Below are positions 1,614-20,514 of a DNA stretch of 64,000 bases, piece by piece. Location: sequence record MW879344.1; one strand, 5' to 3'. Positions within the stretch are counted from its first letter, which is position 1. Each line of letters begins with the position of its first letter. A model generated the notes under the pieces. It was not told where the DNA came from. It worked only from the letters and a program-made list of their open reading frames with translations, and ran no database searches. Made by a program: the position numbers and the translations under genes.

Positions 1614-1729
1614 GCAGTGATCGTCTAGAGGCTTAGGACACGAAAAAGCGATTCTTGGTTAAGAATCTTACGGCATCAATAAACTTTCATTTCACGAACG
1701 TAACGCAGGTTCGAATCCTGCTCACTGCA
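1614..1729 (+). tRNA. tRNA-Glu(TTC) interrupted by a 43-nt insert (1643-1685) in the anticodon stem
   Basis: Acceptor GCAGTGA/TCACTGC, T-arm GCAGG-TTCGAAT-CCTGC; removing 1643-1685 restores CG|TTC/GAACG stem around TTC (1691-1693). Confidence 0.8.
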
Positions 1730-3262: not shown

Positions 3263-3384
3263 GGCGAGTTAGCTCAGTTGGTAGAGCAGGAAAAAAACCG
3301 ATTCTTGTATTGAATCGTACAGCAAACAATACTATTGCACTTTTAATGCCCTTGTCGGGGGTTCAATTCCCTCACTCGCCACCA
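3263..3384 (+). tRNA. tRNA-Lys(TTT) interrupted by a 46-nt insert (3291-3336) in the anticodon stem
   Basis: Acceptor GGCGAGT/ACTCGCC+ACCA; removing 3291-3336 gives GG|GCA-CT-TTT-AA-TGCCC. Confidence 0.85.
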
Positions 3385-7274: not shown

Positions 7275-7680
7275 AATTATTTGTGGATTTCCTGGTATAG
7301 GTAAGAGTAGTATTAAAAATATCGGCAAAGTACTTGATTTGGATAGTTCTTTGTATACCAAGAATTCTTTATTTCCTGCTAATTATATTGTTGATATTGT
7401 ATCTGCAATGGATGAATATGATTATATTTTGGTAAGTACGCATGACGTACTTAGAAAAGAATTACAATCAATGGGTATTAGTTATACTAATGTATATCCA
7501 GAGATTGATTTAGGTGAAGAATACCACGACCGTTATGTTCAACGCGGAAGTCCTGAAAGTTTTATTAATTTTATTGATGAAAATTGGGATGACTTCATAT
7601 ACGAATTGCAGTATGATGATTCTGAATATGTTGAACTGGAAAGCGGTCAATTTCTTTCAGATATTATAGCAAATATTTGA
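7267..7680 (+). CDS. small P-loop NTPase/kinase-like protein
   Basis: Walker A GFPGIGKSS; DLDSS. Confidence 0.75.
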   Translation: MAKIICGFPGIGKSSIKNIGKVLDLDSSLYTKNSLFPANYIVDIVSAMDEYDYILVSTHDVLRKELQSMGISYTNVYPEIDLGEEYHDRYVQRGSPESFINFIDENWDDFIYELQYDDSEYVELESGQFLSDIIANI

Positions 7681-7706
7681 AACGAAAGAAAAAATTGTGG
7701 TATAAT
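7678..7706 (+). promoter_or_regulatory. TGAAAC-N17-TATAAT promoter class
   Basis: Same pattern at 7862-7890, 13345-13373, 17383-17411, 26431-26459, 41636-41664. Confidence 0.7.
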
Positions 7707-7723
7707 ATAGTACATAAGGCAAC

Positions 7724-7840
7724 GGAATCTTACAGCAAAAATACTAATTTTTGATGAAAACGAAACGACGAGGTTCGAATCCTCACCCACGAATTGCCTT
7801 ATTATTAGTGGGAGCACGGTGCTGGATAAACAAAGATTCC
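7724..7840 (+). ncRNA. module-clamped, permuted tRNA-like RNA (degenerate)
   Basis: GGAATC-TTACAGCAA...GAGG-TTCGAAT-CCTC-ACCCAC...GTGGG...AAACAAA-GATTCC. Confidence 0.65.
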
Positions 7841-7861
7841 AGAATTTAAGTTAGAAAATTA

Positions 7862-8391: not shown

Positions 8392-8396
8392 CTAAA

Positions 8397-8506
8397 GGAT
8401 TCGCACAGCAACAATAAAATCTTAAAATTCAATTGGTGAAAACAACCTTGCAGTTCGATTCTGCTTCCACAATGCGTGGATCTGGTCGATAGAAAAAACC
8501 GAATCC
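8397..8506 (+). ncRNA. module-clamped, permuted tRNA-like RNA (degenerate)
   Basis: GGATTCG-CACAGCAA...GCAG-TTCGATT-CTGC-TTCCAC...GTGGA...AAAAAAC-CGAATCC. Confidence 0.6.
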
Positions 8507-8545
8507 TGATTTTAATTAAGAAGTACTAAAGAATTTGATACACAC

Positions 8546-9239: not shown

Positions 9240-9243
9240 CTAA

Positions 9244-9300
9244 GGAATCTAGCAGCAACCATAACCCAATCAAACTTTTAATTTGACAATTATGGATTCC
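9244..9300 (+). ncRNA. module RNA carrying an isolated Lys(TTT)-type anticodon stem-loop
   Basis: GGAATC-TAGCAGCAA...TCAAA-CTTTTAA-TTTGA...GATTCC. Confidence 0.7.
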
Positions 9301-9478
9301 CGTTATTTTTAAGGATGTGATATGTCTAAAGAACAAGATGAATTTGAAAAAGAATATCTTATAAGTAAGCGTATTGATCCAAAAGCAACATTTTATATAA
9401 AATCTCGTAGAAAGAAAAATGGTTATAGAACTCGTGAATTGAATAATAAATTTCAAGAATTTCTTAAACGATTTAAAG

Positions 9479-11329: not shown

Positions 11330-11341
11330 AAAAAAAGTTTT

Positions 11342-11393
11342 AGAATCTAACAGCAATCAAAACTCATTGGATATATGAAAAAAGATAGATTCT
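11342..11393 (+). ncRNA. minimal module RNA
   Basis: AGAATCT-AACAGCAA...TCAT-loop-ATGA-AAAAAGAT-AGATTCT. Confidence 0.65.
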
Positions 11394-11400
11394 AGTATTT

Positions 11401-11473: not shown

Positions 11474-11573
11474 CGAAGTAGTTCAGTACTGAAAAATGTA
11501 CAGTGAAATTATTCAACACTATAGGTAGCACTTTGAATGAATCAGTAAGCCTATAAGTAACTACAATAAATTT

Positions 11574-11700
11574 GGAATTCAACAGCAATTCACTTACTAA
11601 AAACAGCTACCTCACGGTTTGTAGGTTCAAGTCCTACCTTGTACTTTCGAGTACATGTGGTGAAAATGGTAAACACGGCTGTCCAAAAGAAATGAATTCC
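11574..11700 (+). tRNA. circularly permuted tRNA gene, Leu(TAA)-like
   Basis: 3' half 11596-11644, T-TTCG-A linker, 5' half 11651-11682; GCTGT/ACAGC anticodon stem; flanked by GGAATTC/GAATTCC. Confidence 0.75.
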
Positions 11701-11753
11701 AGTATTAATTAAGACATAAATATTCTTATACACTTTTTTGTAAGGATATAATT

Positions 11754-12353
11754 ATGGAAATGAAAAAGTTGATGGAAGATATTTCTGCCATCATGGAAGG
11801 ACAATTACCTGGTTATTATTATCATGGAAGTTCTGCCCCAATATCAAATTTTAGTGATGAGTTTGTTGGTAGAGGAAATGATGAATACGGTCCGGGAATA
11901 TATTTTAGTTCAGTTCCAAATACTTCTATAGGTTATGCAAAAGATGGCGGTTCTAATGGAATGGTATATCAGTGCGAAATCAATTTAAGAAAAGAACTAT
12001 CTAAAAAAACTAGAGTTAATAAAGCAGTACTATTAAAATTAATGCAAAATACACCTGATGAAGATGCATATACTAACTGGAATGAAAATAAAAATGTTGC
12101 TTATAGAACAGCATTACAGGGTTATGTAGATGAAGGTAATATGTATGATGCGTTAATGGGTGTTTGGTACGATTGGTATAGAGAATATCCTGTTCAATTC
12201 GTGCGTTCACTAGTACAGTTAGGATATGATGGATACATATATACTTTTGCAAGCGGTGAACGTTTTATTATAGTATATAATCCAGCAAGTATAAAAGTTG
12301 TAAACACATTCAATCCAGAAGAAGCTATGCAGAAACTGATTGGAAGTGAATAA
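11754..12353 (+). CDS. ADP-ribosyltransferase-fold protein (ART-PolyVal-like), possibly virion-packaged
   Basis: YYHGS, GPGIYFS, YA, late E motifs; ATAAATA at 11716-11722. Confidence 0.6.
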   Translation: MEMKKLMEDISAIMEGQLPGYYYHGSSAPISNFSDEFVGRGNDEYGPGIYFSSVPNTSIGYAKDGGSNGMVYQCEINLRKELSKKTRVNKAVLLKLMQNTPDEDAYTNWNENKNVAYRTALQGYVDEGNMYDALMGVWYDWYREYPVQFVRSLVQLGYDGYIYTFASGERFIIVYNPASIKVVNTFNPEEAMQKLIGSE

Positions 12354-12361
12354 TAAGATTT

Positions 12362-12479
12362 GGAATTCAACAGCAAATCATTCTAAACCCGTAGCATGTC
12401 GTAGGTTCAAGTCCTACCAGTACTTTCGAGTACTGTAGCTCAGTTGGTAGAGCAGCCACCTTAAAAAGAAATGAATTCC
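12362..12479 (+). tRNA. circularly permuted tRNA-like gene, anticodon unresolved
   Basis: T-arm and CAGTACT, TTCG, AGTACTG and D-arm GCTC/GAGC; flanked by GGAATTC/GAATTCC. Confidence 0.7.
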
Positions 12480-12511
12480 AGTATTAATTAAAACAACATG
12501 AGTATAAATCA

Positions 12512-12961: not shown

Positions 12962-12971
12962 AACAAGTTTT

Positions 12972-13034
12972 GGAATCTAGCAGCACCCATAAAATGAAAT
13001 CAACTGTTAATTGAAAAATTCAAAAATGGATTCC
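12972..13034 (+). ncRNA. module RNA carrying an isolated Asn(GTT)-type anticodon stem-loop
   Basis: GGAATC-TAGCAGCA...TCAA-CTGTTAA-TTGA...GATTCC. Confidence 0.7.
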
Positions 13035-13054
13035 AGCCTATTTCGGAGTAAAAA

Positions 13055-13464: not shown

Positions 13465-13581
13465 CAAAAAGTTAAATTCACCAGGCGTACTATGGTGGGA
13501 AAGGTATCATGATACCAATTCGAATAGAATACGTATTAAACCCTTGAACGGTTTTCTGTAAACTCAATTTAACAAATAATT

Positions 13582-13636
13582 AAGAATCTAACAGCAATCA
13601 AAACTCATTCGATTATATGAAAAAAGATAGATTCTT
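13582..13636 (+). ncRNA. minimal module RNA
   Basis: Near-copy of 11342-11393. Confidence 0.65.
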
Positions 13637-13641
13637 GTTTT

Positions 13642-13865: not shown

Positions 13866-13947
13866 GCGGGATTAGCTCAGTGGTAGAGCACTTGCCTTCC
13901 AAGCAAGAGGCGAATAGGTTCCATCGGTTCGAATCCGATATTCCGCT
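13866..13947 (+). tRNA. tRNA-Gly(TCC) with enlarged variable region
   Basis: GCGGGAT/ATTCCGC, U73, CTTGC-CT-TCC-AA-GCAAG, ~15-nt variable region. Confidence 0.85.
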
Positions 13948-14065
13948 CAAACTAAACAAACAATAAGGTGATTTTTATGCTATAGAATCCTAGTACTGGT
14001 CCTCCTAAAGAATTTAATTCTGATATAAACAACTCAAAATTAAACTACTATAGGAAGAACATACC

Positions 14066-14392: not shown

Positions 14393-14400
14393 CAGAATTA

Positions 14401-14457
14401 AAGAATCCAGCAGCAACTAAAACTCATTCGCTTAATATGAAAAAGAAACGGATTCTT
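14401..14457 (+). ncRNA. minimal module RNA
   Basis: AAGAATCC-AGCAGCAA...TCAT-loop-ATGA...GGATTCTT. Confidence 0.65.
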
Positions 14458-14477
14458 GTTTTTATTTGGAAAACGAT

Positions 14478-20427: not shown

Positions 20428-20514
20428 GGGTCGTTCACTCAGTTGGTTAGAGTACCGGACTTTTAATCCGGCGGGTATATCCCATCGAAGGTTCGAATCC
20501 TTCACGGCCTACCA
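20428..20514 (+). tRNA. tRNA-Lys(TTT) with long variable arm
   Basis: CCGGA-CT-TTT-AA-TCCGG, GGG-TATAT-CCC variable hairpin, ACCA. Confidence 0.88.

What the first reader, a model, noticed from the sequence alone, without database searches (positions are those of the whole stretch)
11574..11700. Circularly permuted tRNA-Leu(TAA)-like gene
Seen: the 3' half comes first (TAA-AA-ACAGC, variable arm ACC/GGT, T-arm GTAGG-TTCAAGT-CCTAC, CTTGTAC). A T-TTCG-A linker follows, then the 5' half (GTACATG, Leu-type D-arm, GCTGT), all inside the clamp. GCTGT/ACAGC pair perfectly. This is what results from circularising a type I interrupted gene and opening it in the insert hairpin. Established: permuted tRNA genes in Cyanidioschyzon and Thermofilum mature through a circular intermediate; I know of none in phages. 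Inference: yields a circular tRNA that may be opened or kept as a stable mimic. No other Leu(TAA) gene is in this window.
Basis: partly seen in the sequence, partly recalled or inferred. Interest (0 to 1): 0.93.

Follow-up and report, generated by a model that had tools for sequence, protein, structure and literature searches.

The report
Phage Y-RNA-like tRNA mimic
The "back-to-front tRNA" is real and conserved, but it is most likely a non-decoding tRNA look-alike RNA with a sealed acceptor end, one of a family in large phages that appears to partner a phage-encoded Ro60-like ring protein in RNA repair.

Summary
At 11572-11705 an 8-bp clamp encloses, in order, an anticodon-stem 3' strand, variable arm, T arm, acceptor 3' strand, a TTTCGA loop, acceptor 5' strand, D arm and anticodon-stem 5' strand. 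Six related phages keep this fold with compensatory changes.

A permuted tRNA-Leu(UAA) gene is not the best reading:
- The phage (Erwinia phage pEa_SNUABM_49) has an ordinary tRNA-Leu(UAA) gene 1.7 kb upstream of the window.
- The "anticodon" stretch changes in sequence and length among orthologues (ACTAAAA, ACTAAAAA, ACCCAA), and position 33 is C.
- The discriminator base varies.
- In relatives the closed "acceptor" hairpin shrinks to 3-5 bp.

The element belongs to a family with a paralogue at 12360-12484, degenerate copies, and members in unrelated viral contigs. The family's topology is that of YrlA Y RNAs, its best Rfam match, though below threshold.

The phage encodes a DUF2828/vWA protein whose model matches only Ro60/Rsr structures over its full length. 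That gene sits among RNA ligase, 2H phosphoesterase and CCA-adding enzyme genes. In other viral contigs, family members lie just upstream of this gene.

Verdict: a Y-RNA-like tRNA mimic, a new variant of a known kind. The same clamp module also interrupts conserved tRNA genes, so a cut-and-ligate (circular) fate is not excluded.

The parts
11573..11581 (+). P1 clamp, 5' strand (TGGAATTC plus A11581, which pairs with T11693)
   Evidence: Pairs with 11693-11701. 4 of 8 pairs covary among orthologues. RNAalifold recovers a 9-bp P1 in the family.
11582..11602 (+). 5' strand of the asymmetric internal loop: family-wide conserved ACAGCAA, then a variable stretch ending in the 'anticodon-like' ACTAAAA
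   Evidence: AACAGCAA is invariant in all copies. The distal part varies among orthologues: ACTAAAA, ACTAAAAA, ACCCAA.
11603..11607 (+). Anticodon-stem equivalent, 3' strand (ACAGC)
   Evidence: Pairs with 11678-11682. Compensatory C-G to U-A change in GAP32, CBB and XbC2.
11608..11620 (+). Long variable arm (ACC-TCAC-GGT), class II tRNA-like
   Evidence: A-U to G-C compensatory change.
11621..11637 (+). T arm: GTAGG TTCAAGT CCTAC
   Evidence: The T stem covaries across the wider family.
11638..11657 (+). Closed acceptor-like hairpin: CTTGTAC, TTTCGA loop, GTACATG (6 pairs plus a U.U mismatch)
   Evidence: Orthologues have ACTAT/ATAGT with 10-11-nt loops and tandem G.A pairs. Family members have 3-7 bp hairpins.
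11658..11677 (+). U8-G9 equivalents, D arm (GTG AAAATGGTAAA CAC) and G26 equivalent
   Evidence: Invariant stem and conserved GG in the loop.
11678..11682 (+). Anticodon-stem equivalent, 5' strand (GCTGT)
11683..11692 (+). A-rich 3' strand of the internal loop (CCAAAAGAAA)
   Evidence: An A-rich strand precedes P1' in every copy.
11693..11705 (+). P1 clamp, 3' strand (T GAATTCCA), then the conserved GT(A)T tail
12360..12484 (+). Paralogue E2. It has the same clamp, loop strands, T arm and GTAC-TTTCGA-GTAC hairpin, but a class I type body.
   Evidence: Rfam YrlA 40.5 bits, E 1e-7. R1 123.6 bits. Covariation.
7722..7845 (+). Degenerate family member: clamp, T arm, closed hairpin and a mini D hairpin
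   Evidence: 25.8 bits.
8395..8511 (+). Degenerate family member: clamp GGATTCG/CGAATCC, T arm and closed hairpin
   Evidence: 26.3 bits.
11340..11398 (+). 'Small' copy of the clamp module: P1, ACAGCAA loop, a 4-bp hairpin instead of a tRNA-like body, and an A-rich strand. Similar copies lie at 9242-9305, 12970-13039, 13581-13640 and 14400-14461.

Best explanation
The element is a gene for a structured non-coding RNA of about 134 nt (11572-11705), transcribed with the phage's early tRNA cluster. It mimics tRNA but does not decode.

Its two ends pair in an 8-9 bp clamp (P1). Next comes an asymmetric internal loop with the family-invariant ACAGCAA on one strand and an A-rich strand opposite. A 5-bp stem then leads into a tRNA-shaped body whose T loop and D loop can form the tRNA elbow. 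The acceptor stem of that body is sealed by a loop, so there is no free CCA end. This is the architecture of YrlA-type bacterial Y RNAs.

Most likely (inferred), the clamp plus internal loop is the binding site of the phage's own Ro60-like ring protein (pEaSNUABM49_00180, DUF2828 plus a vWA-like domain). The tRNA-like body would then recruit or present a tRNA-handling partner. The neighbours of the Ro-like gene are candidates: an RNA ligase, a 2H phosphoesterase and a CCA-adding enzyme. A host nuclease is another candidate. The ribonucleoprotein would serve tRNA/RNA repair or quality control during infection.

Shown here: the fold, its conservation and covariation, family membership, the Ro60-like fold of the protein, its RNA-repair neighbourhood, and the genomic linkage of RNA and protein in other phages.

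Inferred: binding, the identity of the partner, and the physiological role.
For: 1. Fold and covariation. E1 orthologues from six phages are 99.4% paired with 6 pairs changed on both sides. The E2-type family is 95.4% paired with 15 double-changed pairs, against 23-47% for slid controls. RNAalifold independently recovers P1, the T arm, the closed hairpin and the D arm.

2. Family.
- Model R1, built without E1, scores E1 at 60.2 bits, E 5e-10.
- Members occur in unrelated IMG/VR contigs of 45-302 kb.

3. YrlA is the best Rfam match for family members: 40.5, 45.6, 35.4, 31.8 and 31.4 bits. YrlA has exactly this order of T arm, closed acceptor and D arm, and lacks a free CCA (PMC4201824; bioRxiv 10.1101/312249).

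4. The element is not a decoder.
- The same phage has a canonical tRNA-Leu(UAA).
- The anticodon-equivalent stretch varies in sequence and length.
- The acceptor hairpin is 3-5 bp in XbC2, Kaldavass and L014/16/22.

5. Partner protein.
- The 508-aa DUF2828+DUF7788 protein gives an AF2 model with pLDDT 86.
- Its top 11 PDB matches are all Ro60/Rsr/TROVE, E 1.7e-10 to 3e-7, over the full length.
- Its neighbours are an RNA ligase, a 2H-SAK phosphoesterase and a PolyA_pol-type CCA-adding enzyme.

6. Linkage. In DUF2828 loci from other viral contigs, R1 hits lie upstream of the gene and on its strand. Examples are L065 (68.7 bits), L095 (67.4), L078 (56.5), L073, L080 and L101. Small modules abut the gene start in L076, L080, L081 and L046.
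Against: - E1 scores only 13.9 bits against Rfam YrlA, whose gathering score is 69.
- The outer stems of the YrlA model and its GNCGAAN0-1G Ro-binding motif are not matched.
- In this phage the Ro-like gene lies about 200 kb from the element.
- In the other contigs both the gene and the RNAs sit in tRNA clusters, so part of the linkage could be indirect.
- No canonical TROVE Pfam match was found. The Ro60 relationship rests on a predicted structure.
- The same clamp module also occurs without any tRNA-like body and inside tRNA genes. A pure Y-RNA model does not explain this.
- There are no expression or binding data.
Confidence: 0.58

Rival explanations
1. Cut-and-ligate element. The clamp module is a protein-dependent splice or circularisation signal. 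An endonuclease cuts both strands of the internal loop and a phage RNA ligase joins the ends. In interrupted tRNA genes this would remove the module as an intron. In this element it would close the anticodon stem and release a covalently circular, very stable tRNA mimic.
For: - The same module sits in tRNA-Glu(UUC) (1614-1729) and tRNA-Lys(UUU) (3263-3381) between positions 28 and 29. Removing it precisely gives canonical tRNAs.
- The interrupted tRNA-Lys is kept in XbC2 with covarying exons and an intact CTTTTAA anticodon loop.
- The phage encodes an RNA ligase, a 2H phosphoesterase and a CCA-adding enzyme beside the Ro-like gene.
- The topology of the permuted and interrupted forms is interchangeable.
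Against: - No endonuclease was identified, no bulge-helix-bulge motif is present, and Rfam reports no ribozyme match.
- Intact paralogues of the interrupted tRNAs exist (Glu 8318, Lys 20428, Tyr 22821), so splicing is not required.
- The CBB copy of the interrupted tRNA has a 10-nt, non-canonical anticodon loop.
- No junction data exist.
Confidence: 0.16
2. Cis-acting transcript element. The clamp module, with or without a tRNA-like body, is a processing, stability or regulatory structure of the polycistronic early transcripts. Possible roles are an RNase P or RNase E punctuation site, a 5'/3' end protector, or a leader controlling the downstream gene. No dedicated protein partner is involved.
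For: - All copies are intergenic, on the transcribed strand, and immediately upstream of tRNAs or ribosome-binding sites.
- A U/A-rich tail follows P1'.
- Small copies abut the start of the Ro-like gene in other contigs.
- M. smegmatis YrlA is cut by RNase P when its acceptor has 7 bp (PMC4201824).
Against: - A simple processing site does not need a conserved T-loop/D-loop elbow, a covarying variable arm, or the conserved A.C mismatch in the stem.
- Sigma-70-like promoters and terminator-like sites are not enriched, and only one copy has a strong promoter just upstream.
Confidence: 0.13
3. True circularly permuted tRNA-Leu(UAA) gene. The flanks are removed, the ends are ligated in the anticodon loop, the acceptor loop is opened by RNase P and a 3' nuclease, CCA is added, and the tRNA is charged and decodes UUA.
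For: - The rejoined halves are called tRNA-Leu(taa) by ARAGORN.
- The body is class II with a Leu-like D arm.
- The acceptor has 7 positions in Eneladusvirus.
- The phage has a ligase and a CCA-adding enzyme.
Against: - A canonical tRNA-Leu(UAA) gene is present in the same phage.
- Position 33 is C, and the discriminator is T or G rather than the A73 that E. coli LeuRS needs (established knowledge).
- The anticodon stretch becomes ACCCAA in XbC2 and Kaldavass and ACTAAAAA in CBB, while the body is conserved.
- Mimasvirus orthologues have only 4-5 Watson-Crick acceptor pairs plus tandem G.A pairs, and a self-pairing 10-11-nt loop.
- No bulge-helix-bulge motif is present.
Confidence: 0.04
4. Selfish or decaying repeat. 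The module is a small mobile or recombination-prone repeat that has captured or disrupted tRNA pieces and has no function of its own.
For: - There are many copies in one region, in three topologies, some degenerate.
- Homing HNH endonuclease genes lie in the tRNA regions of relatives.
Against: - The element is orthologous and syntenic across two phage genera, with compensatory changes in five helices.
- The family is present in unrelated phages.
- Copies are found on one strand only.
Confidence: 0.05

Closest known systems
YrlA-type bacterial and phage Y RNAs (Rfam RF02553; Chen et al. 2014, PMC4201824; structure in bioRxiv 10.1101/312249)
   Same: - The 5' and 3' ends pair in a stem.
- The order of parts is the same: stem, variable region, T arm, closed acceptor-like hairpin, D arm, stem.
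- There is no free CCA end.
- The anticodon-stem equivalent carries an irregularity. Here it is a conserved A.C mismatch in the E2 type.
- The genome encodes a Ro60-fold protein and RNA-repair enzymes.
- YrlA is the best Rfam match for the family.
   Different: - All scores are below Rfam's gathering threshold (13.9-45.6 bits against 69).
- The Ro-binding module differs: a GGAAUyy/rrAUUCC clamp with an ACAGCAA loop instead of GNCGAAN0-1G.
- The candidate protein partner is a DUF2828-family Ro60 look-alike, not a Pfam TROVE protein.
- This copy has a class II (long variable arm) body.
- There are several paralogues per genome inside the tRNA cluster.
- The module also occurs alone and inside tRNA genes.
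Circularly permuted tRNA genes of Cyanidioschyzon merolae and Thermofilum pendens (own knowledge; reviewed in PMC4090602 and PMC3400036)
   Same: The 3' half lies upstream of the 5' half in one transcript. The two flanks pair with each other. A short linker joins the acceptor strands.
   Different: - No bulge-helix-bulge motif.
- No conserved 7-nt anticodon loop or U33.
- The acceptor is variable and often too short.
- A normal gene for the same isoacceptor is present.
- The host is bacterial and has no known splicing endonuclease.
Two-piece (permuted) tmRNA genes
   Same: The tRNA-like domain is encoded in permuted order (T arm and acceptor 3' strand before the acceptor 5' strand). Permuted tmRNA genes occur in phage tRNA clusters next to family members (L019, L020).
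   Different: ARAGORN and Rfam call no tmRNA here. There is no tag reading frame and there are no pseudoknots. A full D arm and variable arm are present, and the acceptor is closed.

Membership tests
Circularly permuted tRNA gene | 3' half precedes the 5' half on one strand, joined by a short linker between the acceptor strands | tested here: met
Circularly permuted tRNA gene | Leader and trailer form a bulge-helix-bulge motif for the splicing endonuclease | tested here: not met
   By inspection: an 8-9 bp clamp next to a roughly 21 x 10 nt asymmetric loop. No 3-nt bulge / 4-bp helix / 3-nt bulge can be drawn.
Circularly permuted tRNA gene | Joined halves give a canonical anticodon loop (7 nt, U33), with the anticodon conserved among orthologues | tested here: not met
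   C at position 33. The stretch is ACTAAAA, ACTAAAAA or ACCCAA among orthologues.
Circularly permuted tRNA gene | Acceptor can be opened to 7 bp plus a discriminator suited to the synthetase, then CCA | tested here: not met
   U.U mismatch at 6:67. The discriminator is T or G, against A73 in the phage's real tRNA-Leu. Only 4-5 Watson-Crick pairs in Mimasvirus orthologues. 3-5 bp hairpins in family members.
Circularly permuted tRNA gene | Circular intermediate and a mature, charged tRNA exist | not testable with these tools
   Needs RNA from infected cells.
YrlA-type Y RNA | Terminal stem formed by the RNA's two ends, plus a large internal loop | tested here: met
   P1 covaries.
YrlA-type Y RNA | tRNA-like domain in the order T arm, closed acceptor-like hairpin, D arm | tested here: met
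YrlA-type Y RNA | Reaches the Rfam RF02553 gathering score | tested here: not met
   E1 13.9 bits and E2 40.5 bits. Best family member 45.6 bits, against a cut-off of 69.
YrlA-type Y RNA | GNCGAAN0-1G motif in the Ro60-binding module | tested here: not met
   Absent. The conserved strand is GGAAUyyAACAGCAA.
YrlA-type Y RNA | Encoded with a Ro60/Rsr orthologue | tested here: inconclusive
   - No Pfam TROVE hit among 20 proteins of 440-610 aa.
- A DUF2828/vWA protein has a Ro60 fold.
- Its gene is about 200 kb away in this phage.
- In other viral contigs it lies 0.05-1.5 kb downstream of family members.
YrlA-type Y RNA | Bound by the Ro60 protein | not testable with these tools
   Needs co-purification or EMSA.
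Permuted tmRNA | Tag reading frame and pseudoknots; detected by ARAGORN or Rfam tmRNA models | tested here: not met

The most novel reading that the evidence does not exclude
The clamp module (P1, ACAGCAA loop, A-rich strand) is the recognition signal of a protein-dependent RNA cut-and-join system in large phages. The system would be scaffolded by the Ro60-like protein and completed by the neighbouring RNA ligase and 2H phosphoesterase. It would splice a new class of non-group-I introns out of phage tRNA genes at positions 28/29. It would also convert elements such as this one into covalently circular tRNA mimics.
Probability: 0.15. Interest if true: 0.9.

Novelty: new variant of a known kind. 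Interest (0 to 1): 0.6.

Why it matters
- Y RNAs that mimic tRNA are known from bacteria and a few phages, but their partners and roles remain poorly understood.
- This family pairs a distinct end module with a very widespread, uncharacterised protein family: DUF2828, with at least 580 relatives in IMG/VR. That protein appears to be a Ro60 look-alike sitting among RNA-repair genes.
- The pairing gives a testable RNA partner for the protein. It also points to a phage ribonucleoprotein for tRNA repair or counter-defence against host anticodon nucleases.
- Annotation pipelines miscall these RNAs. The interrupted tRNA-Glu is annotated as tRNA-Phe(aaa) with an intron.
- The same module inside conserved tRNA genes raises the possibility of an unrecognised kind of tRNA intron in bacteria-infecting viruses.

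Tried and rejected
- **Ordinary interrupted tRNA.** Rfam's tRNA model gives only 15.7 bits on a forced alignment.
- **Known ribozyme, riboswitch or other Rfam family for the clamp module.** Nothing at E <= 1 in 3-27 kb.
- **Bulge-helix-bulge motif.** None can be drawn.
- **Clamp as promoter or terminator.** Sigma-70-like sites are not enriched: 33 found against 36.6 expected. Only element 7725 has a strong promoter just upstream. The one terminator-like call in the finding is the T arm itself.
- **tmRNA-like reading of the conserved ATGAATTCCAGTATTAATTAA after the body.** No tmRNA call, and the stretch is the P1' strand.
- **T-arm/D-arm pattern hits near DUF2828 genes in L084 and L050.** These proved to be ordinary tandem tRNAs.
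- **Sequence search of the DUF2828 protein against PDB.** No Ro60 hit. Only the fold search showed the relationship.
- **E1 as a recent copy of a phage class II tRNA.** It is no closer to any of them than they are to each other.
- **Literature.** No paper on permuted tRNA genes or such tRNA introns in phages was found. Burroughs and Aravind 2016 (PMC5062991), which may discuss Rot/TROVE relatives, is not held.

Full report
**Origin of the window.** The window is the last 64 kb of Erwinia phage pEa_SNUABM_49 (MW879344.1, Eneladusvirus, 358 kb). This is a RaK2/GAP32-like jumbo phage. Window position equals record position minus 294049. The first 27 kb hold the phage's tRNA cluster: 21 ARAGORN calls, all on the + strand.

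**The observation.**
- Clamp: TGGAATTC 11573-11580 with GAATTCCA 11694-11701.
- ACAGC 11603-11607 with GCTGT 11678-11682.
- Variable arm 11608-11620.
- T arm 11621-11637.
- CTTGTAC 11638-11644, TTTCGA 11645-11650, GTACATG 11651-11657.
- D arm 11660-11676.

ARAGORN sees nothing in the native order. On the hand-rejoined halves it calls tRNA-Leu(taa). Three details differ from a good tRNA-Leu. Pair 6:67 is U.U. The base at position 33 would be C. The base after the acceptor 3' strand is T.

**Conservation.** Orthologues sit at the same place, after tRNA-Ile, in five other phages: Yersinia phage fHe-Yen9-04, Cronobacter phage GAP32, Pectobacterium phage CBB, Xanthomonas phage XbC2 and Erwinia phage Kaldavass. 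An IMG/VR contig carries another. On their alignment, 24 pairs of the clamp, anticodon-like stem, variable arm, T arm and D arm are 99.4% paired. Six pairs changed on both sides. Slid controls give 35-37%. The acceptor strands also covary: CTTGTAC/GTACATG against ACTAT/ATAGT and ATTAT/ATAAT. The permuted cloverleaf is therefore a selected structure.

**Why it is not a decoding tRNA-Leu(UAA).**
- The phage has an ordinary tRNA-Leu(taa) at record 292274-292362, 1.7 kb before the window. Its anticodon loop is CTTAAAA, and it has A73 and an encoded CCA. The phage also has tRNA-Leu(tag) and tRNA-Leu(caa).
- The body is conserved, but the stretch that would become the anticodon loop is not. It reads ACTAAAA in Eneladusvirus and GAP32, ACTAAAAA in CBB, and ACCCAA in XbC2, Kaldavass and L018.
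- The discriminator position is T or G. The closing loop is 6 nt in Eneladusvirus and 10-11 nt and self-pairing in Mimasvirus. There the acceptor has only 4-5 Watson-Crick pairs plus tandem G.A pairs.
- No bulge-helix-bulge motif can be drawn. The flanks form a plain 8-9 bp helix next to a roughly 21 x 10 nt loop.

**A family, not a singleton.**
- A paralogue at 12360-12484 (E2) has identical flanks, an identical T arm and the same GTAC-TTTCGA-GTAC hairpin, but a class I type body.
- More degenerate members lie at 7722-7845 and 8395-8511.
- The clamp module also occurs around a mere 4-bp hairpin, in 'small' copies at 9242, 11340, 12970, 13581 and 14400.
- With the clamp capped by a loop, the module sits inside tRNA genes at 1614-1729, about 2061-2186 and 3263-3381.
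- The module consists of a P1 of consensus GGAAUyy/rrAUUCC, then nAACAGCAA, with an A-rich strand before P1'.
- A pattern scan of IMG/VR found the module plus a T arm in 15 loci, including unrelated contigs of 45-302 kb.
- In those contigs the acceptor-like hairpin is 3-4 bp with a triloop (L014, L016, L022) or 5 bp with a 15-16-nt loop (L010, L020). In XbC2 and Kaldavass E2 it is the palindrome CAGTACTAGTACTG. A sealed hairpin of variable length is thus the conserved state.
- Nine E2-type sequences give 95.4% pairing, 15 pairs changed on both sides, and a conserved A.C or C.A mismatch in the middle of the anticodon-like stem.
- RNAalifold independently recovers P1, the T arm, the closed hairpin and the D arm.
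- A covariance model built from these nine sequences (R1) scores the finding at 60.2 bits, E 5e-10. Within the whole phage genome it finds family members only in the tRNA region.

**What it resembles.**
- The order (terminal stem, T arm, closed acceptor, D arm, terminal stem) is that of YrlA Y RNAs. These mimic tRNA, lack a free CCA end and have a kinked anticodon-like stem (PMC4201824; bioRxiv 10.1101/312249).
- YrlA is the best Rfam match for E2 (40.5 bits, E 1e-7) and for members in other phages (45.6, 35.4, 34.3, 31.8 and 31.4 bits). All are below the gathering score of 69. E1 itself scores 13.9 bits.
- The score comes from the tRNA-like part. YrlA's outer stems and its GNCGAAN0-1G motif are not matched.

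**A candidate protein partner.**
- None of 20 phage proteins of 440-610 aa hits Pfam TROVE.
- pEaSNUABM49_00180 (508 aa; DUF2828 plus the vWA-like DUF7788) gave an AlphaFold model with pLDDT 86 and pTM 0.85.
- The model's first 11 PDB matches are all Ro60, Rsr or TROVE structures: Xenopus and human Ro60, D. radiodurans Rsr, and Thermus phage phiLo Ro60. E-values run from 1.7e-10 to 3e-7 over the full length. The next matches cover only the vWA domain.
- NCBI names the GAP32 homologue 'RNA-binding protein'.
- The gene lies among an RNA ligase (PHA02142 OB fold plus RNA_ligase), a 2H 'Swiss army knife' phosphoesterase and a PolyA_pol-type CCA-adding enzyme. This is the composition of Ro-associated RNA-repair systems described for jumbo phages (PMC7824862).
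- In this phage the gene is about 200 kb from the RNA.
- Among 80 IMG/VR loci centred on DUF2828 genes, all R1 hits lie upstream of the gene and on its strand. They are L065 (68.7 bits), L095 (67.4), L078 (56.5, 350 nt upstream), L065b, L073, L101 and L080. Small modules abut the start codon in L076, L080, L081, L046 and L073. P1 covaries among them: AGGAUAC/GUAUCCU, AGGAUGU/ACAUCCU, AGGUUCU/AGAACCU.
- In those contigs the gene is embedded in a tRNA cluster. The linkage is real, but it could be partly mediated by the cluster.

**Mechanism proposed.** The RNA folds into a sealed tRNA mimic on a stalk whose conserved clamp and loop bind the Ro60-like ring. The tRNA-like elbow recruits a tRNA-handling enzyme or competes for one. 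The particle acts in tRNA/RNA repair or quality control during infection. Structure, family, protein fold and linkage are shown here. Binding and role are inferred.

**What remains open.** The same module interrupts tRNA-Glu(UUC) and tRNA-Lys(UUU) between positions 28 and 29. Precise removal gives perfect tRNAs. The interrupted tRNA-Lys is kept in XbC2 with covarying exons and an intact anticodon loop. This fits an excisable element. Against that reading, intact paralogues exist, the CBB copy has a non-canonical loop, and no endonuclease or ribozyme was found.

**Verdict.** 'Permuted tRNA-Leu gene' is not supported as a decoding tRNA. The best reading is a Y-RNA-like tRNA mimic of a phage-wide family, a new variant of a known kind, with a testable Ro60-like partner.

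Noticed in passing
window 1614-1729 and 3263-3381 (also about 2061-2186; L008 33282-33400): These tRNA genes are interrupted by the same clamp module, capped by a loop.
- tRNA-Glu(UUC) carries a 43-nt insert and tRNA-Lys(UUU) a 46-nt insert, both between positions 28 and 29 of the anticodon stem. Precise removal gives canonical tRNAs, and the Lys gene encodes CCA.
- The record annotates the first as tRNA-Phe(aaa).
- A third gene (Tyr-GUA-like, with a bulged T stem) has the insert at 31/32.
- The interrupted tRNA-Lys is conserved in XbC2 and Kaldavass with covarying exons. The CBB copy has a 10-nt anticodon loop.
   Followed up: partly
window 9242-9305, 11340-11398, 12970-13039, 13581-13640, 14400-14461: 'Small' copies of the clamp module, with a 4-5 bp hairpin in place of a tRNA-like body. 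They sit immediately upstream of tRNA genes or ribosome-binding sites. Equivalent small copies abut the start of the Ro-like gene in other viral contigs.
   Followed up: partly
window 11754-12353 (+): The gene between the two tRNA mimics encodes a 199-aa ADP-ribosyltransferase. It hits Pfam ART-PolyVal at E 1.8e-11, has a weak PARP match, and carries the motifs YHGS...GPGIYFS. GAP32 and CBB keep the gene, preceded by a family member.
   Followed up: partly
record MW879344.1 99701-107366 (outside the window; L026 1-7666): An RNA-repair gene cluster: RNA ligase, the Ro60-like DUF2828/vWA protein, a 2H-SAK phosphoesterase and a CCA-adding enzyme. A PIN-PhoH protein and an NAMPT-like enzyme lie elsewhere in the genome.
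   Followed up: partly
window 7677-7706 and 7714-7722 / 7794-7802: A near-consensus sigma-70 promoter (TTGAAA, 18 nt, TATAAT with a TG) sits just upstream of family member 7722-7845. In addition, ATAAGGCAA upstream of that clamp is perfectly complementary to TTGCCTTAT in its acceptor-hairpin loop. This could be a pseudoknot or an alternative pairing.
   Followed up: no
window 13866-13948 and 20428-20514: tRNA-Gly(tcc) and tRNA-Lys(ttt) are 83 and 87 nt long, about 10 nt longer than usual. They still score 60-67 bits against the tRNA model. The position of the extra bases was not examined.
   Followed up: no
L019 417-609, L020 4238-4542, L014 4162-4492, L016 6897-7359: Phage tRNA clusters from IMG/VR that carry family members also carry tmRNA genes, including permuted (two-piece) ones, within a few hundred bases.
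   Followed up: no
record MW879344.1 290410-290485 (outside the window; L008 46361-46436): The record annotates a tRNA with anticodon CTA ('tRNA-Pyl(cta)'), which would be a possible amber-suppressor tRNA.
   Followed up: no
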